From Saccostrea cucullata (taxonomy: Eukaryota), in NCBI RefSeq assembly GCF_032062105.1, contig NW_026933053.1, positions 1 to 54,491 on the forward strand: 54,491 nucleotides of DNA, read 5' to 3'. Below, one piece after another: positions 2,226 to 54,491 of this stretch. The notes under the pieces were generated by a model. It had not been told where the DNA came from and searched no databases. It worked only from the letters and a program-made list of their open reading frames with translations. Made by a program: the position numbers and the translations under genes. How positions within the stretch are numbered: position 1 is the first letter of the stretch; the number at the start of each line of letters is the position of its first letter.

Positions 2226-5200
2226 TATTCACTAATTACAGGGACTACTGTTATAACAAATACTCAAAACTGTACTTAAGTACCATTGTTTTCCATTAAG
2301 ATTCTGTGCTAATTTTAGAGTGAGTCAGAGAAGTCCTCTGTGTCGACTGGAACAGAATGGAATGCTGGGATACCAAAGACAGTGTCCACAACTGAGACGG
2401 CAGCTGTTTATCATGTGTAGAGACTGTATGTTAACCAGTAAAGACTGGACCGGTCAAATGGTCACTCAGTAAGTCTTGTGTAGAGACTGTATGTTAACCA
2501 GTAAAGACTGGACCGGTCAAATGGTCACTCAGTAAGTCATGTGTAGAGACTGTATGTTAACCAGTAAAGACTGGACCGGTCAAATGGTCACTCAGTAAGT
2601 CATGTGTAGAGACTGTATGTTAACCAGTAAAGACTGGACCGGTCAAATGGTCACTCAGTAAGTCACATCAGATCACCTGTAGAGACTGTATGTTAACCAG
2701 TAAAGACTGGACCGGTCAAATGGTCACTCAGTAAGTCATGTGTAGAGACTGTATGTTAACCAGTAAAGACTGGACCGGTCAAATGGTCACTCAGTAAGTC
2801 ATGTGTAGAGACTGTATGTTAACCAGTAAAGACTGGACCGGTCAAATGGTAACTCAGTAAGTCATGTGTAGAGACTGTATGTTAACCAGTAAAGACTGGA
2901 CCGGTCAAATGGTCACTCAGTAAGTCATGTGTAGAGACTGTATGTTAACCAGTAAAGACTGGACCGGTCAAATGGTCACTCAGTAAGTCACATCAGATCA
3001 CCTGTAGAGACTGTATGTTAATCAGTAAAGACTGGACCGGTCAAATGGTCACTCAGTAAGTCTTGTGTAGAGACTGTATGTTAACCAGTAAAGACTGGAC
3101 CGGTCAAATGGTCACTCAGTAAGTCATGTGTAGAGACTGTATGTTAACCAGTAAAGACTGGACCGGTCAAATGGTCACTCAGTAAGTCTTGTGTAGAGAC
3201 TGTATGTTAACCAGTAAAGACTGGACCGGTCAAATGGTCACTCAGTAAGTCATGTGTAGAGACTGTATGTTAACCAGTAAAGACTGGACCGGTCAAATGG
3301 TCACTCAGTAAGTCATGTGTAGAGACTGTATGTTAAACAGTAAAGACTGGACCGGTCAAATGGTCACTCAGTAAGTCACATCAGATCACCTGTAGAGACT
3401 GTATGTTAACCAGTAAAGACTGGACCGGTCAAATGGTCACTCAGTAAGTCTTGTGTAGAGACTAACTATATTAACAACATTTTACAGACACACTTTACCA
3501 GCTGACTCTATAATATATTATGATTACATTTTACAGACACCCTTTATCACCTGGCTCTCTATTGTAATTACATTTTACAGACACCCTTTATCACCTGGCT
3601 TTATATTGTGATTATATTTTACAGACACCCTTTACCAGCTGATCACTCCATTAATTTCCTGGCCCACATTCCTTTAGAGGAGTACGGACCCTGTTTGCAG
3701 GTTGAGGGAGACAGCTCTGGGACCCTGTCGCGCCTGGAGGAGGTGACAGATGGTTTCTCTATATCAGCCATCAAGGTGTGTAGAAGTTTAGACACAAAAA
3801 ACTAACGGGATTTTTCTAAATTAAACCTAAATACTACTCTACCAAGGGCAAGAAGTACCAAAACAAAACATATAGTCATTTATGTAGGGTCAGTTTAGTA
3901 CAACGTTAAAGTGCCAAGTTATTTCAAAAGCCAGTTAATGAGTTTACACATTAAAGGGGGGAGCGTCTCGTTGAACTTTCACATGGTTTGGCTAACGTCA
4001 GTAAAAAGGAGATTAAGAAATACAAAACAAAAATACAAAACAAGAAATGCTCAAGAATACTGTAAACCAACTTTTATTCGCGACGACTTTATTTCGCGAT
4101 TTACCGGGAGTAAACTAGTTCGCGACGATAAATTTTCGCGATCAGGTCATTTTGGAACTGTTTTTAATAGTTTAAGAGACTTTAAGGACCCTTTCGCGGC
4201 GAGAAATATTCGCGATGATGAGGCTCTCGCGAAACTCGCGAAAATTTCTCGCACGCGAATAAAAGTTGGTTTACAGTAATAAGACGTGGCACCAAGACTA
4301 TAAACTGAGAACTAAGTCAAAATTTTGATTTAAATCTGTTCTCAGTTTATGGTCTTGGGGCCTGATAGGTGAATGCAGGTTTACTGTTCAAGCTTAATGC
4401 TTTGTTCCAAGATGTATAGTCTACTTGTTTTGTTGGTGTTTTACAATTTCAACATTCCTCTATTCATGACAGGGAATTAATCATGTCTGTAGGCTGCAGT
4501 ACTCGGAGTTCTGTAGATGTGTCGTTCTACGTGTACTTCAGGCTGTAGGTAGGTCTACACACTTCATCAGGTTATGAATATTTATAGTCCATCAAAGCTG
4601 CACATCATTTCATTTATCTCAGTTTTATAACATCAAAAAATATAAATGTATGGACCAAAAGCCATTGAATGTAATATTTATGATGGGGGTTACTTGTACT
4701 TGAAAAAATTCAGATTCACCAAGTAGCAGTGTTGCCCCAGAAACAGGAGGGATTCTTGAGAAAGTCTGGGGATGGATCAAAGAATTGGAGACCCTTCACA
4801 GTTACTACAGCAGTGTTACAAGTCTGTCAGACACGCTACCTCAAAAATCAGACCTCAGTCAAATGAATGACCTTGACATAGCAGTGCACAGCCTTGACCT
4901 TCATTTACAGTCAGCCTTACTGACGTATTTTTGTATGCATGTCAGGTATTTATACACTGGTGTGATTACATGTATGTTTTTTCTGGTTCAATATTGCTTA
5001 ATCCCCCCCCCCCCAAGTAAATGAAATAAAATAATGATGAGAAACTACATCAATCTCCAGAAACTCTGTTGACAAAATTTAAAGCAAATTAAATTATTTT
5101 GTAATTTTTTTTTGTTTGACACCTCAGGGTCAGGAAACTGTCAGTCCTTTTAAAGCATTCAGCCAATCAGAATACAGAGATTAAACAAGACAACCAATCA

Positions 5201-19100: not shown

Positions 19101-22100
19101 ATAACTTACTTTAAGACTAGAAGTTCCCTCTCTGCCGTTTCCTTTGCATCGTTTGCTGCTCGGATCCGCTCCTCCATTTTCTCTTTCTCCGCGTGTTTGT
19201 AGGCTTCCTGGTCAATCTTCCTCCTGTCTATTTCCTGCAGCTTTGTCTCTAATGCCAGTCTGTAAATGTCAAGAGAAACTTTTGTCACATACTGTACCAT
19301 GTCAAAACAGTTTATAAACTTTTGTCATATACTGTACCATGTCAAACAGCTGATATACTTTTGTCACAAACTGTACATGTACATTGTAAAATGCAACTGA
19401 TACTTTTCCTCAGCCAACTTAATAAATAAATTTACCCTGAAATACTCTTTACTATCATAAGAAATTGGATTGCATATTGTCCATCCATGTTCTCTATTCC
19501 ACTTATCATAAAAGCAGTGGCCTTATATGTAAAGCTAATCAGTCAAAACTAATACCAGCTCAACCTACTTCTAATTCATTATGACCCGCTGTGTTCTGGT
19601 CAGTGTGTGACTTACTTCTCACTCTCCACACCAGTCAGTTTGTGACTTACTTCTCACTCTCCACACTGGTCAGTTTGTGACTTACTTCTCACTCTCCACA
19701 CCAGTCAGTTTGTGACTTACTTCTCACTCTCCACACCAGTCAGTTTGTGACTTACTTCTCACTCTCCACACCAGTCAGTTTGTGACTTACTTCTCACTCT
19801 CCACACCAGTCAGTTTGTGACTTACTTCTCACTCTCCACACTGGTCAGTTTGTGACTTACTTCTCACTCTCCACACCAGTCAGTTTGTGACTTACTTCTC
19901 ACTCTCCACACTGGTCAGTTTGTGACTTACTTCTCACTCTCCACACCAGTCAGTTTGTGACTTACTTCTCACTCTCCACACCAGTCAGTTTGTGACTTAC
20001 TTCTCACTCTCCACACCAGTCAGTTTGTGACTTACTTCTCACTCTCCACACTGGTCAGTTTGTGACTTACTTCTCACTCTCCACACTGGTCAGTTTGTGA
20101 CTTACTTCTCACTCTCCACACCAGTCAGTTTGTGACTTACTTCTCACTCTCCACACTGGTCAGTTTGTGACTTACTTCTCACTCTCCACACCAGTCAGTT
20201 TGTGACTTACTTCTCACTCTCCACACCAGTCAGTTTGTGACTTACTTCTCACTCTCCACACTGGTCAGTTTGTGACTTACTTCTCACTCTCCACACTGGT
20301 CAGTTTGTGACTTACTTCTCACTCTCCACACTGGTCAGTTTGTGACTTACTTCTCACTCTCCACACTGGTCAGTTTGTGACTTACTTCTCACTCTCCACA
20401 CCGGTCAGTTTGTGACTTACTTCTCACTCTCCACACCGGTCAGTTTGTGACTTACTTCTCACTCTCCACACCAGTCAGTTTGTGACTTACTTCTCACTCT
20501 CCACACTGGTCAGTTTGTGACTTACTTCTCACTTTCCACACCAGTCAGTTTGTGACTTACTTCTCACTCTCCACACCAGTCATTTTGTGACTTACTTCTC
20601 ACTCTCCACACTGGTCAGTTTGTGACTTACTTCTCACTCTCCACACCAGTCAGTTTGTGACTTACTTCTCACTCTCCACACCAGTCAGTTTGTGACTTAC
20701 TTCTCACTCTCCACACCAGTCAGTTTGTGACTTACTTCTCACTCTCCACACCGGTCAGTTTGTGACTTACTTCTCACTCTCCACACCAGTCAGTTTGTGA
20801 CTTACTTCTCACTCTCCACACCAGTCAGTTTGTGACTTACTTCTCACTCTCCACACCGGTCAGTTTGTGACTTACTTCTCACTCTCCACACCAGTCAGTT
20901 TGTGACTTACTTCTCACTCTCCACACCAGTCAGTTTGTGACTTACTTCTCACTCTCCACACTGGTCAGTTTGTGACTTACTTCTCACTCTCCACACCAGT
21001 CAGTTTGTGACTTACTTCTCACTCTCCACACCAGTCAGTTTGTGACTTACTTCTCACTCTCCACACCAGTCAGTTTGTGACTTACTTCTCACTCTCCACA
21101 CCAGTCAGTTTGTGACTTACTTCTCACTCTCCACACTGGTCAGTTTGTGACTTACTTCTCACTCTCCACACCAGTCAGTTTGTGACTTACTTCTCACTCT
21201 CCACACCAGTCAGTTTGTGACTTACTTCTCACTCTCCACACCAGTCAGTTTGTGACTTACTTCTCACTCTCCACACCAGTCAGTTTGTGACTTACTTCTC
21301 ACTCTCCACACCAGTCAGTTTGTGACTTACTTCTCACTCTCCACACCGGTCAGTTTGTGACTTACTTCTCACTCTCCACACCAGTCAGTTTGTGACTTAC
21401 TTCTCACTCTCCACACTGGTCAGTTTGTGACTTACTTCTCACTCTCCACACCGGTCAGTTTAACAAACTCCTCCTCCCTGGCGGCCTGGACACGCCGGAC
21501 AGCGTCCCTCTCTTTCTCCACCAGAGCCCGTGCCTGCTGGTCAATCGTGTGTTTGTTTATCTCCAACTTGGTCTGCAAATCTGAAGAAAAAAGATGTTTT
21601 TGTGTGAAACACTGATGCCCCCATAGGGCAGCTTATGGCAAGGGTTGAAGTTTCTAAATTGTAAGTAAAACTCCAAAGGTAAAGGTCAAAGTTGTTGGTG
21701 GCCATAGGAAGGTCCTGTCACAAGGAATACATCCAAGGAAAACATTCAAGGAATAGATTAAAAAGGTAAAGTGGGTAGGCAGCATAACATGGCTTAGTAC
21801 AGTATTCTTCTCAACCAATGAAATTTCAAGATTATCATAGAAGGGTTAGGTATAACATGACCTCCCATTAAGTTATTTGGAGAGTTTATGTAGGTCCCGC
21901 AACTACAATTTTCAGCTTGTGTGAACTTTTAATAACTACAAATATAACCTACCATCCACTACATTCAGAAGTTTGTCTCTCTCCCTCTCTAACTCTCCCC
22001 TCTGTTTTAACATGTCCATTTTGAGGTTGGTGAGGTCGACTTTGTTTTTGTGGGTCAGTTCCTCCAGTTTATTTTTATAGACGGCGTTCTCCTTCTCCAG

Positions 22101-37329: not shown

Positions 37330-39760
37330 CTAATGTGCGCGGTCCGTGACATGCGCAGTGTGATGTTTGTGACGACACACAGTGACGGGTACTTCAGAAT
37401 GGTGTACTACGTAATCACTAACGCTGCCCAGAAGAGTTCTACGCACTGTTCCCAGACCTCGGCTACCGATGATTATATTGTTGGCCTGTGCTTCATTAGC
37501 GAGACGTATAATGACTTCGCCAGGTTTTCCAAATGATGTTTTCACACATCCTTGTATCTAAATATTAAATAAATAGAGACAGAAAATGACAGAGAAAAAT
37601 CCATAATACTTAAATAGAAAAAAAACCTGGCTATTCAGAAAAGTGCGTCCTCTATTTTGTCTTCCTTTTTAAATTAACGATGAGAATTAAATATTCAATA
37701 ATTCCTTATAATTTGATTTTGCTATTAATACCAATTCATATTATTTAATCATTGAATCATACATCATGTTTATGAAGAAACAATCATCTGTTTTGACAAT
37801 ATGATGATAAAGTACCCCCCAGAGTATAATATATTCACCGAGTCTGAAGGGCGAGTCAAATATTGTGCATTTAACGCATCTCGACTAAAACCAGCTCCTT
37901 AACTCTTTAATGATATTTTACGTATTATACATTCTATATACAAGATTAGTACATTATATTTGATACGTGTATATACCTACCCCGTTTGACTTTAATTTCT
38001 TTTCCAATTCTATCCGTAACTTCTTCTGTGATTCTTCCTCCTGTGACATGATGTTACAGACCGACTCTATGTCTGCTGTGCCCATCGCTGTAGAAAAAAT
38101 ATATATTAATAACTCGGTTATAACGAAGTCACTGGGACCTATGAAATTACTATATCCGTAATTTGTTATATTCGTATAAGGAATTCATTAAATTTATATA
38201 GATGGGGATCCAAGATAACTTCGCTATATCCGTGAATTCGCAATATCCGTGTTCGTACTAAACGAGTATTCTGTAGAATCTCTTTAAGCAGTGAACCAAA
38301 GGTCCTAGAGTGCTAGTTGTTAATACATGTCCCCGTGGAAAGCATGATTCCTCCTTTAAGCAGTGAAGAAGAGGTCCTAGAGATTTTTATTTATTAAAAC
38401 ATGTATACATGATTACCCCCGTGGAAAGCCTGGTGCCTCTCTAAGCAGTGAACCAGTACGACATTATCACTAGTCCGTCTGAACTGCTCCAGGTACCCTG
38501 TAAGTATGAATGAAATAAAAATGTAATGGTCGCCAGACAAAATTCTTTTTTGTTTGAAGCTTGAATTATAATTATGGAAAGTGCATTCCCAAGCATTTGA
38601 ATTTCAAAGTGACAAAGTTTAGGGTTTTTTTAGCTCTACTGGTCAGAGACCAGAAGAGCTTATGCGATTGTAATATGTCCATCCGTCTGTCTAGCTGTAG
38701 ACTAGACTAAGATACATAATTCTTTGTATAGGTTTTTAATTTCGATGAACGGTGTTGCAGTGATTACTAAAAACAGAAATTTCTGTGAAATACTTTTAAA
38801 ATTTAATGCTACTCCTCCTACACTTTTGGTCGGATTTAATATAACTTGACACACAAGTAAACTACACTAAGATACATAATTCTATGTATGGGTTATTGAT
38901 TTCGATGAACGGTCTTGCCTTGGTTACTAAAAAAAGAAATTTCTGTGAAATGCATTTAAAATGCTACTCCTCTGACAGTTTTGGTCTGATTTTCAATATA
39001 ACTTGGCACACAAATAGACAACACTAAGATACATAATTCTGTTTATCGGTTTTTGATTTCAATGAACGGTGTTTCCATGGTTACTAAAAATAGAAATTTC
39101 TGTGAAATACTTTCAAAATGCTATTCCTCCTACAGTTTTGGTCTGATTTCAGTATAACTTGGCACACAAGTAGACTACACTAAGATACATAATTCTGTTT
39201 ATTTGTTTCTGATTTCCCTGAACAGTGTTGCTGTGGTTACTAAAAATAGAAATTTCTGTGAAATTCTTTCAAAATGCTACCACAATTACAGTTTTAGTCT
39301 GAATATACTATAATTCATCATGCAAGTAAACTACTTTGAGATACATAATTATCAGTTTTTTTGTTCTTGATTTTGCTGATTGATGTTGCTAACCCTTGGT
39401 AACTAAAATTGAAAATTCTGTGAAATTTTATGAAGAGCCACTCCACATTTGAAGTCTTATTTCAATCTTGTAAAAAGAGACTTCATCAAGTATCATTATT
39501 CTATTTATTGCTTTTTTAAATGTTTTTAAAAGTCCCAACTGCTACTTTTCTTTTATTTTAATTACAAACCAGTAGACCTACAGTCTCAACAGAGACTTCT
39601 GTTTTTTTTTCTGGAGGATTTCAAAATGAAGAGGAAGAATGCATTTAAGGGATATTTCAAGGATTGGAAGAGAACTTCCTGTAAAAAGTCACATTTAAAA
39701 TTCAATGTTTATTTATGATTATTAACTATTTTGTACCTCATATATGACTAATTTTTAAAA

Positions 39761-39791
<31 letters not shown>

Positions 39792-40219
39792 CTTTATTAT
39801 TTGGATATTTTTAATTAACCTAAAAGAAATTGGCTAAAACAGTTGCATTCGGATCATGATCTACAGGGACCAAATAATATAAGAGGAATTCCAAATGGAT
39901 ACGATTTATTTGTTTAATTTTCTCATCCAAGACTCGCTTCCTTCGATTACTAGATTAAAACAGACGAAAACGAATAAATAGAAAAATACTCAGTAAAGTT
40001 TTTGACAAAATATTTATGGAGTTCGAATGGCGGGTGAACTCTTGGGTGCAATGTATAGATTGATCAATTTTCAGAGCTACGTTAAGAAAAAGAAAACAAT
40101 ACTTGTGTATAGAATAAAAACCGGGTGATAATATACATACACTGAAATGCAATATCGGAATGGCTGCTTCCGTCCACGGCTATCACCACGTTACGGGCTG
40201 GACCATTCTTAGACTCCAT
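37330..40219 (-). CDS. Universal stress protein (UspA-domain) paralogue 1, complete, 4 exons
   Basis: Exons 40219-40141, 38497-38417, 38087-37981, 37557-37330. N-terminal VVIAVDGSSHSDIAFQWY; ATP-binding motif GSRGLGTVRRTLLGSVSDYVVHH. Confidence 0.93.
38280..38460 (-). repeat. Decayed duplications of the USP1 exon 2 end
   Basis: Exon CCCGTGGAAAGCCTGGTGCCTCTCTAAGCAGTGAACCA versus CCCGTGGAAAGCATGATTCCTCCTTTAAGCAGTGAA (~38332) and CTCTTTAAGCAGTGAACCA (~38282). Confidence 0.8.
38626..39603 (+). mobile_element. Helentron/HINE with ~157-bp internal tandem repeats
   Basis: 5' TTAGCTCTACTGGTC..GACCAGAAGAGC hairpin, short GTCC/GTCT tract, five units containing AAGATACATAATT-like cores, 3' CCAGTAGA..AGTCTC..GAGACTTCTGTT. 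Confidence 0.8.
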
Positions 40220-40598
40220 ACTGGATTACACAGTTTTCTCAGGGTTTTGGGGTGGTTTTTTTTTTTTTTTTTTTTTGAGCGACGAGGTCACCCCTGGTCA
40301 CTTACAACACGACCCAGGATCTTTATCTGGTCACTGTGTTTACACGTGATAAAACAATGACCCACAATCAGTTACGTCTGTAGACAATATATATATATAA
40401 TAAATAATTGCTTTAATTGTACAAAAACATTAAAGATGACATGTTATTGGGGAAATTAGGAAAGAAAGTCAATTGACCCACTCTCTTCAACTTCCCACCC
40501 ATTTGTTACATTATTTTGAAATTTTAGATCTAAAGTTTAAACTTATCTGTAACTATAGATAAGTTTAAAGTTAAGAATTAAACTTTTAACGTAGCACA

Positions 40599-42872: not shown

Positions 42873-45800
42873 ATGGGACAACGTCATAGTAAATTGGCTC
42901 CGAAAACTTTAGCCGAGCTGAGAGATCAGACGAACTTCACTGTGGAGGAACTTAATGAGTGGTATAAAGAATTCAGAAGTAGCTGGCCGAAAGGAGCCCT
43001 GACAGTGGACGAGTTTAAGAAGGCCTACTCCACTTTCTTCCCGCTAGGGGACGCCTCGGAGTTCGCCAAACACGTGTTCCGGGTTTTTGATCAGAATGAT
43101 GATGGTTTGCTGGACTTCCGGGAATTCGTCTGCGGGTTTAGTGTCGTCCTGAGAGGAAGTGTTGACGACAAACTGTCCTTCAGTTTCCAAATCTACGACA
43201 TTAACGGCAACGGATTTATCACCAGAGACGAAATGAAGGAGGTGCTTTCTGTACGTATAAAGATTTAGCTAAAATTTGAACTTCGTTGCATCTTGGTCTT
43301 TGCAGCATATTTGAAATTTTACCGCGAGATAGTAGATCATGCATGCAGTTGTATCGTGGGCCTTTTATTACGCTTTAAAGTTTTTTTTTTGTACTTTAGT
43401 TCATAAATTATAAATTTTCACGACATTAACTTTATAATTAACAATGTAAACATCTAAATCCTTCAAGAAAGAATAGGGGCACGCGAATAAGCCGAAAATA
43501 TCAATGCTGAAAATACGTCAATGAATAAAAGAGAGCAAACCATTCAATTAGAAATACTTAGAAATCAACGAAATACTTCATTTATTATTGAAACAATATG
43601 CTACAGTTTCAGTAGCCTTGAAAGTATTTACTAATAGAATAGCATGTGCCCAATGAAATTTCTCTGTAATTTAGGCGATATACAAGATGGAGAGCGCGCT
43701 GTCACCTGACGTGTGTGTAGTATTATAATAGTAAATCTACCTTTCTCTGTAATTTAGGCGCGCTGTCATCTGACGTGTATCTAGTTTTATAATAGTAAAT
43801 CTACCTTTCTCTGTAATTTAGGCGCGCTGTCAGCTGACCTGTATGTAGTATTATAATAGTAAATCTACCTTTCTCTTGAATTTAGGCGCGCTGTCACCTG
43901 ACGTGTTTCTAGTATTATAATTGTTAATCTACCTTTCTCTGTAATTTAGGCGCGCTGTAACCTGACGAATTTCTAGTATTATAATTGTAAATCTACCTTT
44001 CTCTGTAATTTAGGCGCGCTGTAACCTGACTTATTTCTAGTATTATAATTGCAAATGTACCTTTCTCTGTAATTCAGGCGCACTGTCAGCTGAGGTGTAT
44101 GTAGTATTATAATAGTAAATCTACCTTTCTCTGTAATTTACGCGCACTGTCAGCTGACGTGTATGTAGTATTATAATAGTAAATCTACCTTTCTCTGTAA
44201 TTTAGGCGCACTGTCAGCTGACGTGTATGTAGTATTATAATAGTAAATCTACCTTTCTCTGTAATTTAGGCGTACTGTCAGCTGACGTGTATGTAGTATT
44301 ATAATAGTAAATCTACCTTTCTCTGTAATTTAGGCGCGCTGTCACCTGACGTGTATGTAGCATTATAATAGTAAATCTACCTTTCTCTGTAATTTAGGCG
44401 CGCTGTCACCTGACGTGTTTCTAGTATTATGATAGTAAATCTGCCTTTCTCTGTTTGATGCGCGCTGTCACCTGACGTGTATCTAGTATTATAATAATAA
44501 ATCTACCTTTCTCTGTAATTTAGGCGCACTGTCAGCTGATGTGTATGTAGTATTATAATAGTAAATCTACCTTTCTCTGTAATTTAGGCGCACTGTCAGC
44601 TGACGTGTATGTAGTATTATAATAGTAAATCTACCTTTCTCTGTAATTTAAGCGCGCTGTAACCTGACGTGTATGTAGTATTATAATAGTAAATCTGCCT
44701 TTCTCTGTAATTTAGGAGCGCTGTCACCTGACGTGTTTCTAGTTTTATTGTAGTAAATCTACCTTTCTCTGTAATTTAGGCGAGCTAGCTATCAGCTAAC
44801 GTGTATCTAGTATTATAATAGTAAATCTGCCTTTCTCTGTAATTTAGGCGCGCTGTCACCTGACGTGTTTCTAGTTTTATTATAGTAAATCTACCTTTCT
44901 CTGCAATTTAGGCGAGCTAGCTGTCAGCTAACGTGTATCTAGTATTATAATAGTAAATCTGCCTTTCTCTGTAATTTAGGCGCGCTGTCACCTGACGTGT
45001 TTCTAGTTTTATTATAATAAATCTACCTTTCTCTGTAATTTAGGCGAGTTAGCTGTCAGCTAACGTGTATCTAGTATTATAATAGTAAATCTACCTTTCT
45101 GTGTTATTTAGGCGCGCTGTCACCTAACGTATTTCTAGTATTGTAATCGTAAATCTACCTTTCTCTGTAATTTAGGAGCGCTGTCACCTGACGTGTTTCT
45201 AGTTTTATTATAGTAAATCTACCTTTCTCTGTAATTTAGGCGAGCTAGCTGTCAGCTAACGTGTATCTAGTATTATAATAGTAAATCTACTTTTCTTTTT
45301 TATTTAGGCGCGCTGTCACCTAACGTATTTCTAGTATTATAATCGTAAATCTACCTTTCTCTGTAATTTAGGCGCGCTGTAACCTGACGTATTTCTAGTA
45401 TTATAATTGTAAATCTACCTTTCTCTGTGATTTAGGCGCGCTGTAACCTGACGTATTTCTAGTATTATAATTGTAAATCTACCTTTCTCTGTAATTTAGG
45501 CGTGCTGTCACCTGACGTGTATCTAGTATTATAATAGTAAATCTACCTTTCTCTGTAATTTAGGCGCACTGTCAGCTGACGTGTATCTAAAATTATAATA
45601 GTAAGTCTACCTTTCTCTGTAATTCAGGCGTGCTGTAACCTGACGTATTTCTAGTATTATGATTGTAAATCTACCTTTCTCTGTAATTTAGGCGCGCTGT
45701 CATCTGACGTGTATCTAGTTTTATAATAGTAAATCTACCTTTCTCTGTAATTTAGGCGCGCTGTCATCTGACCTGTATCTAGTATTATAATAGTAAATCT

Positions 45801-46655
45801 ACCTTTCTCTTGAATTTAGGCGCGCTGTCACCTGACGTGTTTCTAGTATTATGATTGTTAATCTACCTTTCTTCGTAATTTAGGCGCGCTGTAATTTAGG
45901 CGCGCTGTAACCTGACGAATTTCTAGTATTATAATTGTAAATCTACCTTTCTCTGTAATTCAGGCGCACTGTCAGCTGAGGTGTGTGTAGTATTATAATA
46001 GTAAATCTACATTTCTCTGTAATTTACGCGCACTGTCAGCTAACGTGTATGTAGTATTATAATAGTAAATCTACCTTTCTCTGTAATTTAGGCGCACTGT
46101 CAGCTGACGTGTATGTAGTATTATAATAGTAAATCTACCTTTCTCTGTAATTTAGGCGTACTGTCAGCTGACGTGTATGTAGTATTATAATAGTAAATCT
46201 ACCTTTCTCTGTAATTTAGGCGCGCTGTCAGCTGACGTGTATGTAGCATTATAATAGTAAATCTACCTTTCTCTGTAATTTAGGCGCGCTGTCACCTGAC
46301 GTGTTTCTAGCATTATAATAGTAAATCTGCCTTTCTGTGTAATTCAGGCGCGCTGTCAGCTGACGTGTATGTAGTATTATAATAGTAAATCTACCTTTCT
46401 CTGTAATTTAGGCGCGCTGTCAGCTGACGTGTTTCTAGTATTATAATAGTAAATCTGCCTTTCTCTGTAATTTAGGCGATGTACAAGGTGGAATGCGCGC
46501 TGTCAGCTGACCCCACGAGAGACGACCCGGAAGAGAGAACCGACGCCATCTTTAATCAGATGGACATTAATTGTGATGACAACTTGTCCCTGGAAGAATT
46601 CGTACAGGGGATCAAAAAGGACCCCCACATCCTTAAAATACTGGAAATCCAGTGA
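42873..46655 (+). CDS. Neuronal calcium sensor family protein (neurocalcin/hippocalcin-like), 2 exons, about 185 aa
   Basis: Exons 42873-43250 and 46476-46655. MGQRHSKL myristoylation motif; EF-hand loops DQNDDGLLDFREF, DINGNGFITRDEM, DINCDDNLSLEEF; family motifs FFPLGDASEFAKHVFRVFD and KKDPHIL. Confidence 0.93.
43658..46512 (+). repeat. 64-bp minisatellite made of the NCS 3' splice site plus exon start (about 43 acceptors)
   Basis: Unit TTTCTCTGTAATTTAG|GCGCGCTGTCA(C/G)CTGACGTGTATGTAGTATTATAATAGTAAATCTACC; the last copy is the true acceptor at 46475. Confidence 0.97.
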
Positions 46656-47674
46656 CACGAGATGAAAACGGCTAATTGTTTGCTTTGTGAACTTTAATGC
46701 CAATTAATAAACTGATTTAGGACACTAAAGAGTGTAAAGAGCTCGTGTTCAATGTATTGAAATGTCTCGATATATACATATTTATGTGTAACTGGCTGGT
46801 TGTACATGCATCAATCAATTATTTATTCCATTGCATTTAAAACTGTTTTCGAATAATACTAATCAATACATGTACATTTAAATATCTACACATCTTTTAG
46901 TTAATTGATACGTCAGTGTTTAATATATATTCTTTGTATTTTTTGATTTTTTACTCTTATTAAACTGAAGAAAAAGAAAAATTCAAATGACTGCTGTTTT
47001 ACCAACAATTAAAATTCAATAAATATCCACTGTTTAATACCTCAATGTTTTACACTGTTTTTATATAGAACTCCACTTAATTGTACTTCATCACGCTAAC
47101 GCACAAACCACCGTGACGTCACTGCACTTAACTTTGGGGTATCATAAAATATCAAATGAGTCATATCCACGGGATAAACATGGGATAAATAATTAATAAA
47201 TATCATAAAATTTATTGAATATATATATATATATATATATATTCCTTTAAAACTTCAAAGACTAGGGGAAGTAGAAAACAGAAATGTTAAACACTGTGTA
47301 ATTGTCCCTTTTTATCTCAAGCCATTATTGACTACATTTTCACTTTTTCTTTGTACATTGTTCTAATTTCATATAAAACACACAAATTGTAAGCAAAGTC
47401 AACTTGATACAGTCATGTACATTTCACATAGATCGACGGTTATTGCTTTATTTTGACATTGATACAAATATCTTTAAGTTACTAGTTACATGATAGAGCT
47501 TCAAAATTGACTTACTTCAAGTCCCATTAATATACATTACAATACTAAATAAACAATATTTTAGCTTTGAAATAGACTCACTTCAAGAATATTAATGAAA
47601 CACGCCGCCACCTCTACACAAGGTAAAGCTATAATTAGTAACTAGCATCACATGGTTTGTAATCTGTTTTTTTT

Positions 47675-50600
47675 TCACTTCCGGTCCCCTAGAATCTCGT
47701 GCACGTGACTCGGGTGGCGACACACGACGACGGGTACGTGGGCATGGTGGACAAGATAATCACTGACAGTTCCGATCAGGGTCCGCCGGACCTTGCCCAT
47801 CCCACGACAGCCGCAGATGATGACGTCAGCATTCTCTCGCTCCGCAGTGGACACCACGAATTCACCTGGTTTACCTACCCCTGTTTTAACTGAGCCGGTT
47901 AACTGAAAAAAGAATTTTAAAAATCAGTTAATAATTCTAATCTTTATTGTGAAAATAAGGCGTCGTAAAAATTGTGACATTCAATTTCAACATACACCAT
48001 TATATGATCAGACTCTGTATTTCTTTGTTGTGATATAATTCTTGTTGAATATCACTGTGCGTCTTTTAAAATGATCACTACTATCTACTACAGTGCTAGA
48101 ACAACATTTTCAGTTTTGTTGTGTGATAATGGATGTAGGTATCAATGTAATCATTATCTTTTGATCCTAGTGTACCTTATTCTGTGAATATGTATTAAAA
48201 TTTACACACAGTATAATTAAGTTATAATGTATACTGTATTCTGTGTATACCTTATTCTGTGTGTACCTTATTTTGTGTATACCTTATTCTGTGTGTACCT
48301 TATTCTGTGTGTACCTTATTCTGTGTATACCTTTTTATGTGTATACCTTATTCTGTGTATACAATTAAATTCTTAATTAAAAACTTGGATTGTAACTGTG
48401 TGTATCCTATATTCAGAACACATTTATATACCTTTTAAAATTCTGTGTGTACATTAAAGCATTGTGAAGTTCTGTACAGTACATCAGGAGATTCTGTGTG
48501 TACCTTATTAGACAAAAGCACTGTGTACCATATATCTGTGTGTCACAGCTTTTTTCTGTGTTTATCTCCATATTGGAAAAGGACTGTGTGTACCTTTTAC
48601 TGTGTACCATTATTCTGTGTGTACCGGATTTTGTAAACCTTATTCTGTGTACCCAATATTCTGTGTACCACTTTCAGGCTGTGTGTTCCTACATACTTTA
48701 CATGTGTATAGCTTATTCTGTGTATACCTTATTCTGTATATGTCTTTTAAAATGACCTTATCTACTACAGTGTACAACATTTTCAGTTTTGTTGTGTATG
48801 GATGTATAGGTATCAATGTACATTATCTTTTATTCTGTGTACCTTATTCTGTGTGTACACTTAGTATAACTTATAATGTATACTGTATTCTGTGTATAGC
48901 TTGTTCTGTGTGTACCTTTTTCTGTGTGTACCTTATTCTGTGTGTATACTGTATACCTTATTCTGTGTGTACCTTATTCTGTGTACCTTATTCTGTGTAT
49001 ACCTTATTCTGTGTTTACCTTATTTTGTGTATACCTTATTCTGTGTGTACCTTATTCTGTGTGTACCTTATTCTGTGTATACCTTATTCTGTGTACCTTA
49101 TTCTGTGTATACCTTATTCTGTGTATACCTTATTCTGTGTACCTATATACTGTGTGTATAGCTTGTTCTGTGTATACCTTATTCTGTGTTTACCTTATTT
49201 TGTTTGTACCTTATTCTGTTTGTAACTTTTTTTGCGTACCTTATTCTGTGTATCTTATTCTGTGTTTACCTTATTCTGTGTACCTTATTCTGTGTGTACC
49301 TTATTCTGTGTATACCTTATTCTGTGTATACCTTATTCTGTATGTACCTTATTCTGTGTATACATTATTCTGTGTGTACCTTATTCTTTGTACCATATTC
49401 TTTGTATAGCTTGTTCTGTGTATACCTTTTTCTGTGTGTACCTTATTCTGTGTATACCTTATTCTGTGTGTACCTTATTCTGTGTACCTTATTCTGTGTA
49501 TACCTTATTCTGTGTTTACCTTATTTTGTGTATACCTTATTCTGTGTTTACCTTATTTTGTGTATACCTTATTCTGTGTGTACCTTATTCTGGGTATACC
49601 TTAACTGTGTGTACATTAATTATTCTGTGTATACCTTATTCTGTGTACCTTATTCTGTGTGTACCTTATTCTCGTGTGTACCTTATTCTGTGTACCTATA
49701 TATATTTGTGTGTACCTTATTCTTTGTACCTTATTCTTTGTACTAAATAGCTTGTTCTGTGTATAATTCTGCGTGTCTTAATTTGTGTGTAATTCTGTGT
49801 GTATATTATGCGTACCTTATTTGTGTATCTTATTCTGTGTTTACCTTATTCTGTGTACCTTATTCTGTGTGTACCTTATTCTGTGTATACCTTATTCTGT
49901 GTATACCTTATTCTGTGTGTACCTTATTCTGTGTATAGCTTATTCTGTGTTTATCCTGCAACTACCCCTTGCATTGACCTAATAAAGGTAACCTAATAAA
50001 CCAACTACTGCCCTATAAAGTCTCGTGCATGTATTCAGACGTTCTAAAAGCATTGTGACGTCATGTATATTGCAATGTTTACGCCATGGCGTCACAAATT
50101 TTGCAGAGTTGTGCATAATTTGTCGGAAATAGCTAGTTTTACGTTCAAATGTAAATGTGCAGGATAAACATACAGTGACTGTCTAAGAAATACAAGCGAT
50201 ATTTTCTACACGCGGATTCAACAGAAATTGAGATTCCGCCCTATATCACGTTTTCTTACCCTCGCCCAAATATCGCTTATAAAGACAGTAACCACAGTAT
50301 TTAATATATACCTTATTCTGTGTGTACCTTATTCTGTGTGAACCTTAATCTGTATGTACCTTATTCTATGTATATATACTTTATTCTATATGTACCCTAA
50401 TCTGTATGTACCTTATTCTGTGTATACCTTATTCTGTGTATACTTTATTCTGTGTGTACCCTAATCTGTATGTACCTTATTCTGTGTGTACCTTAATCTG
50501 TGTATACCTTATTCTGTGTACCTTATTCTGTGTATACCTTATTCTGTGTATACCTTATTCTGTGTGTACTGTATTATTCTGTGTACCTTATTCTGTGTAT

Positions 50601-53600
50601 ACCTTATTCTGTGTGTACCCTAATATGTATGTACCTTATTCTGTGTATACCTTAGTCTATGTGTACCTGTCTGTGTATACATGTAGTCAAACCTGTTTTA
50701 AGAGTCCACTCATGGGAGAATGACAAATTGGCCACATAAGACAGATGGCCTCTTATTCCAGGTTTCAAACCAATGAATAAAAAATTGCCACCTAAGTTGT
50801 ATATTTATTTTCATATATATACAAATCCACAATTTCAACACATTTAAAAAAATTGGAAGTTTTAAGTCACATGCAATCCCTTTTCTTACATTTCATTTTA
50901 CATGAATTTCTGAAGGAAATATGTTACTGGTTTTTTTTTGTTTTGTGTTTGTAATTTTAACAGCCTTAGAATTAACATCACACTAAATCATGAAATGTTC
51001 AAATGAATTAGCATTTCTCTGATGCTGTGTAAACCGCTTTGTAGTTTTTCTAGATAACATAATATGCTATAGTGCAAGACTGACTGCTTGACTTGATAAC
51101 CTCAGACAAAATTGTAATTAATGTATTGAGTTAAATATCATGAACATATATTAAAATATGCAACAACTTACTTTCATATATATAAAAAAACACCCAAAAC
51201 ATTTGTTTACAATAAATCATTCACTTATATTAATTAAATCATTTAATCCTGACAGAATTCAAATTACAACCCCAATTATTGGTAATTACTCATTATCAGC
51301 TGTTCATGTTTGGCTTCTCTGAGGATACGAGGTCACGTGCCAGACGGAAGTCATGTGACCAAACAGACAAAATAGCCACTGAAAACAGGCATGTTGAGCG
51401 CACGGGGCCTAAAAACACTGGCAACTGGCCGCGTTAGACAGGTGGCCACTTAAATGAGTTAAAATACAGTGAAAAAATGAACGGGCAGGATCGAAACTGG
51501 CCGCACATGGAGAGTGGCAGGTTGATTAAGGGTGGCCGTAACCTTATTCTGTGTATACCTTATTCTGTATGTACCTTATTCTGCGTATATCTTATTTTGT
51601 GTACCTTATTCTGTGTATACCTTATTCTGGGTGTACCCTAATCTGTATGTACCTTATTCTTTGTATAGCTTATTCTGTGTATACCTTATTCTGTGTTAGT
51701 ACCTTATTCTGTGTACCTTATTGTGTGTACCTTATTGTTTGTATACATTATTCTGTGTGTACCTTATTCTGTGTATCTTATTCTGTGTATACCTTATTCT
51801 GTGTGTACCTTATTCTGTGTACCTTACTCTGCGTACCTTATTCTGTGTATTTTATTCTGTGTTTACCTTATTCTGTGAATACCTTATTCTGTGTGTACCT
51901 TATTCTTTGTACCTTATTCTGTGTATGGCTTATTCTGTGTATACCTTATTCTGTGTATACCTTATTCTGTGTACCTTATTCTGTGTATAGCTTATTCTGT
52001 ATGTACCTTATTTATTTTGTGTGTACCTTAATCTGTGTGTACCTTATTCTGTGTGCCTGATTTCTGAAAAATGAATAAACCTATTTATGTTTAAAAAATT
52101 CTGTGTATACCTTATTCTGTGTTTACCTTACTTCTGTGTACACTTACTCTGTGTACCTTATTCTGTGTTTACCTTATTCTGTGAATACCGTATTCTTTGT
52201 ACCTTATTCTGTGTATACCTTGTTTGTGTGTACCTAATTCTGTGTACCTTATTCTGTGTATAGCTTATTCTGTGTGTACCTTATTTTGTTTATACCTTAT
52301 TCTTTGTATACTTAATTCTGCATGTATCCTAATCTGTATGTACCTTATTCTGTGTATAGCTTATTCTGTTTGTACCTTATTTATTCTGTGTGTAATCTGT
52401 GTGCACCTTATTCTGTGTGTATTCTGTGTACCTTATTCTGTGTATAGCTTATTCTGTGTGTACCTAAATCTGTGTATACCTGTTATTTTGTGTACCTTAT
52501 TGTGTGTAAAGCTTATTCTGTGTATACCTTATTCTGTATACCTTATTCTGTGTGAACCCTTGTTTGTGTATACCTATCTGTGTGTACCTTATTCTGTGTA
52601 TACCTTATTCTGCGTATACCTTATTTTGTGTACCTTATTCTGTGTACCTTATTCTGTGTGTAATTTATTCTGTGTGTACCTTATTTTGTGTGCCTTATTC
52701 TGTGTACCTTATTCTGTGTGTACCTTATTCTGTGTACCTTATTCTGTGTGTACCTTATTCTAACTGTACCTTAATCTGTGTACCTTATTCTGTGTGTACC
52801 TTATTCTGTGTACCTTATTCTATGTGTACTTTATTCTGTGTACCTTATTCTATGTGTACCTTATTCTGTGTGTACCTTATTCTGTGTACCTTATGCTGTG
52901 TGTACCTTATTCTGTGTACCTAATTCTGTGTACCTTATTCTGTGTACCTTATTCTGTATGTACCTTAATCTGTGTATCTTATTCTGAGTACTTTATCCTG
53001 TGTGTACCTTATCCTGTGTGTACCTTATTCTGTGTACCTTATTCTGTATGTACCTTATTCTGTGTATCTTATTCTGTATATACCTTATTCTGTGTATCTT
53101 ATTCTGTGTACTTTATCCTGTGTGTACCTTATCCTGTGTGTACCTTATTCTGTGTGTACCTTATTCTGTGTGTACCTTATTCTGTGTACCTTATTCTGTG
53201 TGTACCTTATTCTGTGTACTTTATTCTGTGTGTACCTTATCTGTGTGTACCTAATTCTGTGTACCTTATCCTGTGTGTACCTTATTCTGTGTGTACCTTA
53301 TTCTGTGTAAACCTTATTCTGTATGTACCTTATTCTGTGTATACATTATTCTGTGTGTACCGTATTCTGTGTGTACCGTATTCTGTGTACCTTATTCTGT
53401 GTACCTTATTCTTTGTACCTTATTTTGTGTACCTTATTCTGTGTATACCTTATTCTGTGTGTACCTTATCTGTGTGTATCTTATCCTGTGTGTACCTTAT
53501 TCTGTGTATACCTTATTCTGTGTGTACCTTATTCTGTGTACCTTATTCTGTGTGTACTTTATTCTGTGTACCTAATTCTGTGTGTACCTTATTCTGTGTA

Positions 53601-54375
53601 CCTTATTCTGTGTGTACCTTATTCTGTGTACCTTATTCTGTGTATACCTTATTGTGCGTGTGTACCTTATTCTTTGTACCTTATTCTTTGTACCATATTC
53701 TTTGTATAGCTTGTTCTGTGTATACCTTATTCTGTGTGTACCTTATTCTGTGTATACCTTATTCTGTGTGTACCTAATTCTGTGTACCTTATTCTGTGTA
53801 TACCTTATTGTGTGAGTGTACCTTATTCTTTGTACCTTATTCTTTGTACCATATTCTTTGTATAGCTTGTTCTGTGTATACCTTATTCTGTGTGTACATT
53901 ATTCTGTGTGTACCTTATTCTGTGTACCTTATTGTGTGTGTGTACCTTATTGTGCGTGTGTACCTTATTCTTTGTACCTTATTCTTTGTACCATATTCTT
54001 TGTATAGCTTGTTCTGTGTATACCTTATTCTGTGTATACCTTATTCTGTGTACCTTATTCTGTGTACCTTATTCTGTGTGTACCTAATTCTGTGTGTACC
54101 TTATTCCGTGTTTACCTTATTCTGTGTATACCTTATTCTGTGTATGTACGTTACCTTATTGTGCGTGTACCTTATTATGTGTGTGTGCCAGTTTTTTCTT
54201 AAGAATAATCTCCTCTATATTTTTTTCACTATGTACCTTATTTTTTGTAACCTTTATTCTCAGTGTACCTTATTCTCCGTTAGTTTTTGTTCTAGCTGTT
54301 TCTGTAGACTTTTCTCTTCTTTCTCCTCTCTATCCAGTATATCACAAACCGTTTTCACATCAGACATACCCAAAG
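47675..54375 (-). CDS. Universal stress protein paralogue 2, last two exons (5' exons lie beyond the window)
   Basis: Exon 54375-54269 is 107 nt, the same length and phase as exon 3 of paralogue 1 (LGMSDVKTVCDIL..KLTENK). Exon 47902-47675 encodes GKPGEFVV..GCRGMGKVRRTLIGTVSDYLVHHAHVPV. Confidence 0.9.
48170..54277 (-). repeat. 16-18-bp satellite made of the USP2 exon end plus donor, filling most of a 6.4-kb intron
   Basis: Plus-strand ACCTTATTCTGTGT(GT/AT) equals minus-strand AGAATAAG|GTACAC, identical to the true junction GAGAATAAG|GTACAC at 54269/54268. Confidence 0.95.
50684..51540. mobile_element. Tc1/mariner/pogo-like non-autonomous element inside the satellite, one end truncated
   Basis: Starts TAGTCAAACCTGT; TGGCC and GACAGGTGGCC subterminal repeats at both ends; runs directly into satellite without a second TIR. 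Confidence 0.55.
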
Positions 54376-54491
54376 CTGGAATCCAAGTTTTCAGAGATAA
54401 TCAAATTTGATTAATTGTAAATTTCATTTAAGTGGACAATTTTTAAACATTAAATATAAGTTGGTAGTGCTAATTGAATACTCTGTCCTTC

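What the first reader, a model, noticed from the sequence alone, without database searches (positions are those of the whole stretch)
48170..54277. A ~6-kb simple satellite is an amplified 5' splice site
The ACCTTATTCTGTGT satellite looks generic and creates dozens of spurious ORFs. On the sense strand it is AGAATAAG|GTACAC, exactly the last 8 nt of the 107-nt USP2 exon plus its donor. The equivalent intron in USP1 (37558-37980) is only 423 bp with no array, so the expansion is paralogue-specific. The true donor must win against hundreds of identical downstream donors. Read-through meets TGA at the third codon.
Basis: seen in the sequence. Interest (0 to 1): 0.8.

Follow-up and report, generated by a model that had tools for sequence, protein, structure and literature searches.

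The report
Splice-donor minisatellite filling a USP intron
The last intron of one universal-stress-protein gene holds about 200 tandem copies of its own exon-end-plus-splice-donor sequence; this is a real, unusually large example of a repeat type already described in human genes and in lancelets, where it is called a "mirage".

Summary

- **Array:** the 6,366-bp last intron of USP2 (a Pfam Usp gene, minus strand) holds about 4.2 kb of a 14/16-bp minisatellite. Its sense unit is identical over 14 nt to the exon end plus donor, AGAATAAG|GTACAC.
- **Decoys:** 101 pseudo-donors match the true site over -3..+6, and 195 are AAG|GTA.
- **Locus-specific:** every genome hit of the 18-mer and of the 30-mer dimer lies here or on contig C15521, which is probably the other haplotype. 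That copy has a 7,489-bp intron.
- **Direction of origin:** the exon end encodes a Glu-Asn residue pair kept in two of the paralogues examined (only the Asn in USP1), and the exon is 107 nt in both USP1 and USP2. So the exon seeded the array, not the reverse.
- **Age:** two transposon insertions shared by both haplotypes show the array is old.
- **Donor use:** RNA contigs from two studies join 54269 directly to 47902, so the authentic donor is used. These contigs are only 90-95% identical to the window.
- **Recurrence:** at least two other locus-specific arrays on this contig also reiterate a splice junction. One has 53 copies here and a single copy in the other haplotype.
- **Precedents:** human F7, IFI6, CBS, LMNB2 and PDGF, and lancelet "mirages".

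Other first-stage notes report many similar arrays elsewhere in this genome; these were not checked.

The parts
54269..54375 (-). Penultimate USP2 exon, 107 nt, ending ...ACGGAGAATAAG. It is 69% purine and contains a 23-nt purine run.
   Evidence: It is 100% identical on C15521. It has the same length as the USP1 exon at 37981-38087.
54263..54276 (-). Junction unit AGAATAAG|GTACAC. This is the outermost array unit and straddles the authentic donor (cut between 54269 and 54268).
   Evidence: Exact 14-mer match listed. The RNA junction 54269|47902 is shown.
54260..54268 (-). First three intron codons in frame, GTA CAC TGA. Any read-through or use of a downstream donor meets this stop.
54145..54262 (-). 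Degenerate proximal units. The first intronic unit, TGAGAATAAAGGTTACA, keeps the exon's GAG and contains AATAAA. The first pseudo-donor AAG|GTACAT is at intron position 33 and the first identical 9-mer at position 99.
51541..54144 (-). Array block A, about 169 units of period 16 with 30/46-bp higher-order periods.
50690..51525 (.). Inserted dispersed repeat of about 836 bp, present in both haplotypes.
   Evidence: at least 275 genome candidates, full-length copies 78-88% identical. The C15521 copy is 94% identical.
50309..50668 (-). Array block B, about 22 units.
49955..50299 (.). Inserted short dispersed repeat of about 345 bp, present in both haplotypes.
   Evidence: at least 1,750 genome candidates. 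The C15521 copy is 83% identical.
48877..49950 (-). Array block C, about 69 units.
48170..48876 (-). Distal mixed zone: short arrays at 48228-48362 and 48703-48741, isolated units, and a duplicated copy of the unique flank.
47903..48169 (-). Unique 3' part of the intron, with the pyrimidine tract and acceptor ttttttcag|.
   Evidence: RNA contig depth falls to zero beyond about 47930.
47675..47902 (-). Last coding exon of USP2 (75 codons plus TGA), carrying the C-terminal half of the Usp domain.
   Evidence: Pfam PF00582, E 2e-14. RNA contigs cover it, and 18 of 22 differences from the window are synonymous.
37558..38087 (-). Paralogue USP1 for comparison: a 107-nt exon ending ...TCAAACGGG|GTAGGT and a 423-bp intron with no array.

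Best explanation
This is a locus-specific minisatellite whose outermost unit straddles the exon/intron boundary of the last USP2 intron.

**Origin (inferred).** A 16-nt piece spanning the boundary, GAGAATAAG|GTACACT, was duplicated in tandem. The extra copies fell inside the intron and so did no harm. The array then grew by unequal exchange or slippage to about 200-270 units of 14 or 16 nt. Partial homogenisation fixed the CAGAATAAGGTACACA form. The array later took up transposon insertions.

**Present state (shown).** The intron is 6.4 kb here and 7.5 kb on C15521, against 0.4-0.9 kb in the paralogues.

**Splicing (partly shown, partly inferred).** The array is a passenger. Splicing still uses the first, authentic donor at 54269 (shown in RNA contigs). 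The likely reason (inferred) is that only that donor sits next to the purine-rich exon and its upstream acceptor, as in the 5'-to-3' scanning and exon-definition behaviour shown for human F7 intron 7. Any use of a pseudo-donor would keep the in-frame TGA at intron codon 3, so it would be unproductive.
For: - **Anatomy and copy numbers:**
- **Locus specificity:**
- **Two diverged haplotypes carry a colinear array** (86-91% identical) with the same two transposon insertions. This excludes an assembly artefact and shows age.
- **The length difference between haplotypes is mostly transposon-borne.** A 911-bp transposon present only on C15521 is the largest part, and a further ~630-bp non-satellite stretch present only on C15521 (not characterised) adds to it.
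- **The exon end is ancestral.** The exon is 107 nt in both USP1 and USP2. The ends read USP3 ...GAGAACCAA|GTAGGT, a C21329 paralogue ...GAAAATAAT|GTATTT, and USP2 ...GAGAATAAG|GTACAC.
- **The first intronic unit keeps the exon-type GAG,** whereas 138 array units have CAG.
- **RNA contigs join 54269 to 47902:**
- **Direct before-and-after example of the same process on this contig.** The 35-bp exon-end-plus-GTAAGT unit is single-copy on the C13300 haplotype and present 53 times here, and it is bounded by an 8/9-nt microhomology.
- **Published precedents:** PMC1557585, PMC3087553, PMC3902484.
Against: - No orthologous intron from another species was available, so the ancestral, array-free state of this particular intron was not seen.
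- The paralogues' donors are GTAGGT while USP2 has GTACAC. The intronic half of the junction unit may therefore have been rewritten by conversion from the array.
- The RNA contigs are assembled contigs only 90-95% identical to the window, from a diverged allele or a close relative. They cannot exclude rare use of pseudo-donors.
- 'Passenger' is a default. No functional test was possible.
Confidence: 0.8

Rival explanations
1. The array arose deeper in the intron from unrelated sequence. It then spread up to the exon and overwrote the junction by gene conversion, so the exon end copies the satellite rather than the reverse.
For: USP1 and USP3 have GTAGGT donors while USP2 has the satellite-type GTACAC. 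The last exon codon (AAG) is not shared with any paralogue examined.
Against: The exonic half of the unit (GAGAAT) aligns with the Glu-Asn codons of USP3 and of a C21329 paralogue, in an exon of conserved 107-nt length. An unrelated satellite would have to match these by chance. The first intronic unit carries the exon's GAG, not the array's CAG.
Confidence: 0.1
2. The array is functional. About 100-200 weak U1-type sites at 14-16-nt spacing act as a sink or decoy. This could tune productive splicing of USP2, for instance under stress, or shield the AAUAAG and AAUAAA hexamers in the intron from premature cleavage.
For: - 101 identical and 195 similar donor motifs are kept in both haplotypes.
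- The array RNA is essentially unstructured, so the sites would be accessible: -26 kcal/mol over 300 nt.
- Each of the 197 AATAAG hexamers overlaps a donor motif.
Against: - Only about 40% of units are canonical.
- The array tolerates transposon insertions and indels between haplotypes.
- Paralogues do without it.
- The donor lacks +4A, +5G and +6T, so it is a poor U1 site. This rests on the established 5' splice-site consensus.
- No expression data bear on the idea.
Confidence: 0.08
3. It is an assembly artefact or a generic dispersed satellite that happens to abut the exon.
For: The assembly is fragmented (23,869 contigs), and both contigs end inside or next to this region.
Against: - Two independently assembled, diverged copies share the same order of blocks and the same transposon insertions.
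- There are no copies elsewhere in 1.17 Gb.
- The match to the exon covers 14 of 14 nt, at the array's exon-side edge and in the same orientation.
Confidence: 0.02

Closest known systems
Human F7 intron 7 VNTR (37-bp minisatellite whose first monomer spans the exon 7/IVS7 boundary); Borensztajn et al. 2006, PMC1557585
   Same: The first unit straddles the exon/intron boundary. The authentic donor is followed by sequence-identical pseudo-donors. Only the most upstream site is used. The donor is weak. The array is length-polymorphic.
   Different: F7 has 5-9 copies of 37 bp (4 nt exon plus 33 nt intron). Here there are about 200-270 units of 14-16 bp (8-9 nt exon plus 6-7 nt intron) over 6.4-7.5 kb, interrupted by transposons. 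Silence of the pseudo-sites is not tested experimentally here.
Human IFI6 (6-16) intron 2 minisatellite, 25 pseudo-donors (Turri et al. 1995, as summarised in PMC1557585); also the CBS IVS13, LMNB2 and PDGF intron 4 boundary minisatellites
   Same: A short-unit array that reiterates the splice donor. LMNB2's repeat likewise covers most of an intron.
   Different: In IFI6 and CBS the first two pseudo-sites are used as well as the authentic donor. Here every downstream donor would include an in-frame TGA. This case has roughly 4-10 times more copies.
Lancelet 'mirage' minisatellites (Adh3, globins BflGb6 and BflGb9, TnC, PGBD5); PMC3087553, PMC3902484; Canestro et al. 2002 cited there
   Same: [quoted passage not shown]
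- Units of 10-160 bp.
- Normal splicing.
- Copy number differs between haplotypes.
- Boundary units are excluded from homogenisation.
- Suspected to be general in that genome; several occur on this one contig.
   Different: The organism of this window is coded and I could not establish whether it is a lancelet. Published mirages have a few to some tens of units. This one is multi-kb and old enough to carry transposons.

Membership tests
Boundary-spanning ('mirage' / F7-type) minisatellite | Head-to-tail array of short units (10-160 bp) | tested here: met
   Period 16/14 with 30/46-bp higher-order periods, about 4.2 kb.
Boundary-spanning ('mirage' / F7-type) minisatellite | The outermost unit spans an exon/intron boundary, so the splice site is reiterated in the intron | tested here: met
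   The 14-nt junction sequence at 54263-54276 equals the array consensus. There are 101 identical 9-mer donors.
Boundary-spanning ('mirage' / F7-type) minisatellite | Locus-specific origin from the gene's own sequence, not a dispersed or transposon-borne satellite | tested here: met
   All genome hits of the 18-mer and the 30-mer lie at this locus, on two haplotype contigs. The exon end is shared with paralogues.
Boundary-spanning ('mirage' / F7-type) minisatellite | The authentic (outermost) site is the one used and the mRNA is normal | tested here: met
   Three RNA contigs from two studies join 54269 to 47902. Caveat: they are contigs 90-95% identical to the window, and rare isoforms would not show.
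Boundary-spanning ('mirage' / F7-type) minisatellite | Allelic variation in length or copy number | tested here: met
   Intron 6,366 vs 7,489 bp, and 202 vs 188 AAGGT cores. Most of the length difference is a 911-bp transposon.
Dispersed satellite / transposon-associated repeat | Copies at many unrelated loci | tested here: not met
   None outside this locus for the 18- or 30-mers. The 14-mer occurs elsewhere at chance level, 7 hits vs 4 for the control.
Universal stress protein family (Pfam PF00582), the host gene | Significant match to the Usp profile | tested here: met
   Last exon E 2e-14, 54.8 bits against a cut-off of 24. USP1 and USP3 match likewise. The first exon, MET..VLIAMDGSVHS, lies on C15521.
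Functional U1 decoy or sponge element | Binding of U1 snRNP and an effect on expression or polyadenylation | not testable with these tools
   Only motif counts and lack of RNA structure are available.

The most novel reading that the evidence does not exclude
Splice junctions may be preferred, still-active seeds of minisatellites across this genome, and such arrays may be a main driver of intron growth. Beyond USP2, at least two other locus-specific junction arrays sit on this 54-kb contig, and two more are probable. One of them is 53 copies in one haplotype and a single copy in the other. Unverified first-stage notes report many more elsewhere in the genome. If real, this implies either a mutational process tied to splice junctions or selection that favours units carrying a splice site. 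The USP2 array would then be the extreme, old end of that process and a natural test bed with 100 identical donors.
Probability: 0.3. Interest if true: 0.65.

Novelty: new member of a known kind. Interest (0 to 1): 0.4.

Why it matters
**For annotation.**
- The array explains a 15-fold intron expansion in one member of a large Usp family.
- It accounts for dozens of spurious ORFs.
- It accounts for an assembly break where two haplotypes failed to collapse.

**For biology.**
- It is the largest natural series of identical 5' splice sites I could find described: about 100 identical and about 200 similar sites at 14-16-nt spacing.
- That makes it an unusually stringent natural test of how the first donor is chosen, whether by scanning, exon definition or site strength.
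- Together with the neighbouring arrays, it suggests that boundary-anchored minisatellites are common and still forming in this genome. This bears on how introns grow and possibly on how new ones arise.

Tried and rejected
- **Reads across the whole intron.** I laid the part beside it, as the tool advised. Donor and acceptor therefore could not be seen as one joint. The junction was read from the loose-end letters instead.
- **Weak RNA evidence.** The runs found hold only 5-11% of the sampled words, so there is no depth-based or rare-isoform evidence.
- **Random survey of arrays.** I did not try another route.
- **No joined gene model.** I did not build or search a spliced USP2 model.
- **Negative searches.** Rfam finds no known RNA in 47600-54491. 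Array RNA and the junction region show no meaningful structure. Pfam finds nothing on the 35-aa penultimate exon or on the short flanking exons of the 63-, 44- and 35-bp arrays.
- **Arrays not tied to a junction.** The 33-bp array on C15521 contains GTAAGT but has no exon next to it. The arrays found in about 105 kb around Usp paralogues were not examined for junction association, apart from copies of the window's own 64-bp and 46-bp arrays. So not every array here is junction-derived.
- **Organism not identified.** The Atlas look-up returned only generic Usp clusters. Canestro et al. 2002 is not held in the library.
- **Costly searches not used.** The big protein searches were skipped, since Pfam settled the family.
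Full report
**What is there**

The window is a whole 54,491-bp contig (C15190) of a 1.17-Gb eukaryotic assembly in 23,869 contigs. 'USP' here means universal stress protein, not ubiquitin protease. The last exons of USP2, USP1 and a third paralogue all match Pfam Usp PF00582, with E values of 2e-14 to 3e-17.

USP2 lies on the minus strand.
- Its penultimate exon is 54269-54375. It is 107 nt long and ends ...ACGGAGAATAAG.
- The intron starts GTACACTGAG.
- The last exon starts at 47902 after ttttttcag, and the stop codon ends at 47675.
- The intron is 47903-54268, 6,366 bp and 33% G+C.

Tandem Repeats Finder reports period-16 arrays at 48228-48362, 48703-48741, 48877-49950, 50309-50668 and 51541-54144. 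Together they cover about 4.2 kb and show 30- and 46-bp higher-order periods. The core ACCTTAT occurs 187 times in the window. Every copy is in this intron and on one strand, with spacing of 16 nt (77 times) or 14 nt (33 times). About 40% of units are one of three canonical forms.

Read on the sense strand, the unit is CAGAATAAGGTACAC(AC). The 14 nt AGAATAAG|GTACAC at 54263-54276 are identical to it. Read-through gives GTA CAC TGA.

**Corrections to the observation**

- Two stretches inside the span are not satellite. Window 50690-51525 is a dispersed repeat with at least 275 genome candidates, and full-length copies are 78-88% identical. Window 49955-50299 is a short dispersed repeat with at least 1,750 candidates.
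- The decoys identical to the true site over -3..+6 (AAG|GTACAC) number 101. A further 51 are AAG|GTATAC, and AAG|GTA totals 195. That is about one hundred identical sites, not hundreds.
- The 27 ORFs of 60 aa or more are almost all antisense and start with GTG.

**Is it a generic satellite?**

No. The 30-nt dimer with up to 2 mismatches has 96 forward and 99 reverse hits in the whole genome. The exact 18-mer has 64 and 63. My own counts on the window and on contig C15521 are exactly 96/99 and 64/63, so there is no other locus. The bare 14-mer has 164 hits. Of these, 157 are at this locus and 7 are elsewhere, against 4 for the reversed control pattern.

**The second copy**

C15521 (56,420 bp) overlaps the window in reverse orientation.
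- Its positions 47607-47900 match window 54491-54190.
- Its end, 55087-56420, matches window 48129-46803 at 98%.
- The 107-nt exon is 100% identical.
- Both contigs end inside the shared region.

The simplest reading is that the two contigs are neighbours whose overlap was assembled from the two haplotypes. I cannot fully exclude a very recent duplication.

The C15521 intron is 7,489 bp. The two introns are colinear at 86-91% identity and share both transposon insertions (the copies are 94% and 83% identical). C15521 has an extra 911-bp dispersed repeat with at least 767 genome candidates. That insertion, together with a further ~630-bp non-satellite stretch present only on C15521 and not characterised, accounts for most of the 1.1-kb length difference; unit number does not (202 vs 188 AAGGT cores). 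The array is therefore real, older than the split between the haplotypes, and older than at least two transposon insertions.

**Which came first, exon end or repeat?**

- The exon is 107 nt in both USP1 and USP2, so the boundary position is ancestral.
- The exon ends compare as follows:

| Gene | Exon end and donor | Last residues |
|---|---|---|
| USP2 | ...GAGAATAAG\|GTACAC | T-E-N-K |
| USP3 | ...GAGAACCAA\|GTAGGT | K-E-N-Q |
| C21329 paralogue | ...GAAAATAAT\|GTATTT | K-E-N-N |
| USP1 | ...TCAAACGGG\|GTAGGT | K-S-N-G |

- The exonic half of the repeat unit is thus family-conserved coding sequence.
- The first intronic unit, in both haplotypes, reads TGAGAATAAAGGTTACA. It keeps the exon's GAG, whereas 138 array units have CAG and only that one has GAG.

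This fits a founding tandem duplication of the 16 nt GAGAATAAG|GTACACT, followed by growth and partial homogenisation. The boundary units were left out of homogenisation, as described for lancelet globin mirages. The intronic half (CAC where the paralogues have GGT) may have been rewritten later by conversion. That is the basis of the 0.1 rival explanation.

**Is 54269 the donor used?**

The RNA search found only weak holders, with 5-11% of sampled words.

Contigs from all four runs cover the last exon, and depth stops at 47904. Two contigs of X2 and one of X6, from two studies, continue beyond 47904 with TATTCTCCGTTAGTTTTTGTTC.... Allowing for the two letters 'ct' shared by both sides, this is window 54271 onward with one difference. 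In other words, it is the exon, and the join is 54269|47902. A decoy donor would read TATTCTGTGTGTACC instead.

These contigs are only 90-95% identical to the window. Of the 22 differences in the coding part, 18 are synonymous. They therefore come from a diverged but functional allele or a close relative, one that keeps the same exon end and junction. Contigs cannot show rare isoforms, so silence of the decoys is not proven.

**How it most likely works**

Shown:
- the anatomy and the locus specificity;
- the age of the array;
- use of the authentic donor.

Inferred:
- origin by boundary-spanning duplication and unequal exchange;
- passenger status.

The donor is weak. It pairs with the U1 consensus only from -2 to +3 and lacks +4A, +5G and +6T. 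This rests on the established splice-site consensus. Most paralogue donors recovered do have G at +5.

The authentic copy alone lies next to a 69%-purine exon with a 23-nt purine run, 107 nt from an acceptor. Experiments on human F7 intron 7 showed that, in just this arrangement, pseudo-sites are functional but only the most upstream site is chosen, by a 5'-to-3' scanning-type process (PMC1557585).

The array RNA has no meaningful structure (-26 kcal/mol over 300 nt), so masking by folding is unlikely. Any downstream donor would retain the TGA at intron codon 3. The product would lack the exon that carries the Usp C-terminal half.

**Comparison with what is known**

The class is described.
- PMC1557585 lists human minisatellites whose first monomer spans an exon/intron boundary: IFI6 with 25 pseudo-sites, CBS IVS13, LMNB2, PDGF intron 4 and F7.
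- In lancelets the same thing is called a 'mirage'. It is reported for Adh3, globins, TnC, PGBD5 and other loci, with units of 10-160 bp at 5' or 3' boundaries. Splicing is normal and haplotypes differ in copy number. [quoted passage not shown]
- All five defining features I could list were tested here and met.

What differs is scale and age: about 200-270 units over 6-7 kb, against 5-30 units in the published cases, and transposon insertions inside the array. Organism names are coded, and I could not establish whether this genome is a lancelet.

**Context found on the way**

The same contig holds other locus-specific arrays that reiterate a junction.
- **35-bp unit, 53 copies (19599-21461).** The unit is the last 26 nt of a minus-strand exon plus GTAAGTCAC. 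The other haplotype, C13300, has flanks 97-98% identical on both sides and exactly one unit, bounded by an 8/9-nt direct repeat. This is a before-and-after pair for the same process.
- **64-bp unit, 43 copies (43694-46478).** It reiterates the acceptor and the start of a terminal EF-hand exon.
- **63-bp and 44-bp arrays (2411-3641).** They appear to reiterate the donor side and the acceptor side of a single intron. The exon status there rests only on open frames with matching phase.

First-stage notes list many more such arrays elsewhere in this genome. Those are unverified leads. A random survey to measure any excess could not be run.

**Verdict**

This is a new and extreme member of a known kind. 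Interest is moderate. The broader pattern in this genome is the more promising lead.

Noticed in passing
window 19599-21461 and L051 (C13300:14000-19500): The 35-bp unit repeated 53 times is the last 26 nt of an exon plus GTAAGTCAC, and the array is locus-specific. The other haplotype has flanks 97-98% identical and a single unit, bounded by an 8/9-nt direct repeat (A-ACTGACC). This is a presence/absence polymorphism of a junction array.
   Followed up: partly
window 43660-46520: The 64-bp unit repeated 43 times reiterates the acceptor tttctctgtaatttag| and the start of a terminal EF-hand exon (46479-46655), with fuller exon-start copies at both ends. It is locus-specific: 27 hits here plus 4 at the start of C21910.
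   Followed up: partly
window 2319-3772: One apparent plus-strand intron seems to consist almost wholly of two arrays. A 63-bp unit repeated 16 times equals about 57 nt of exon end plus GTAAGT. A 44-bp unit repeated 3.6 times equals ttttacag plus the start of the next exon. The open frames on either side are in matching phase, but there is no Pfam support.
   Followed up: partly
L015 / C15521:55425-55445 (equivalent to window about 47785-47800): The C15521 copy of the USP2 last exon reads ...GTCCGTGTGTGACCCTGTGTGG... where the window has ...GTCCGGCGGACCCTGATCGG.... That is 2 nt longer and gives G-K-V-R-V-stop. It is either a null allele or a base-calling error at CpG sites. RNA contigs follow the intact window version.
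   Followed up: partly
C15521:40793-47829 and window 37333-40225: This is a Usp gene cluster. USP3 (exons at C15521 41244-41350 and 42293-42505) and the first USP2 exon (about C15521 45779-45850) lie beyond the window's end. USP1's first exon is at about window 40130-40219. The genome has at least 51 Usp last-exon matches, several in tandem clusters.
   Followed up: partly
C15521:23456-25764: A 33-bp array in two blocks (16 and 39 copies), split by a 490-bp insert, has CAAGTAAGT in its unit but no recognisable exon beside it. So not every array with a donor motif is junction-anchored.
   Followed up: partly
window 38697-39373; C15521 10025-11193 and 19336-20370: A 156-bp tandem repeat recurs at three places on the two contigs at 82-92% identity. 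Unlike the junction arrays it is a dispersed, probably transposon-borne repeat.
   Followed up: no
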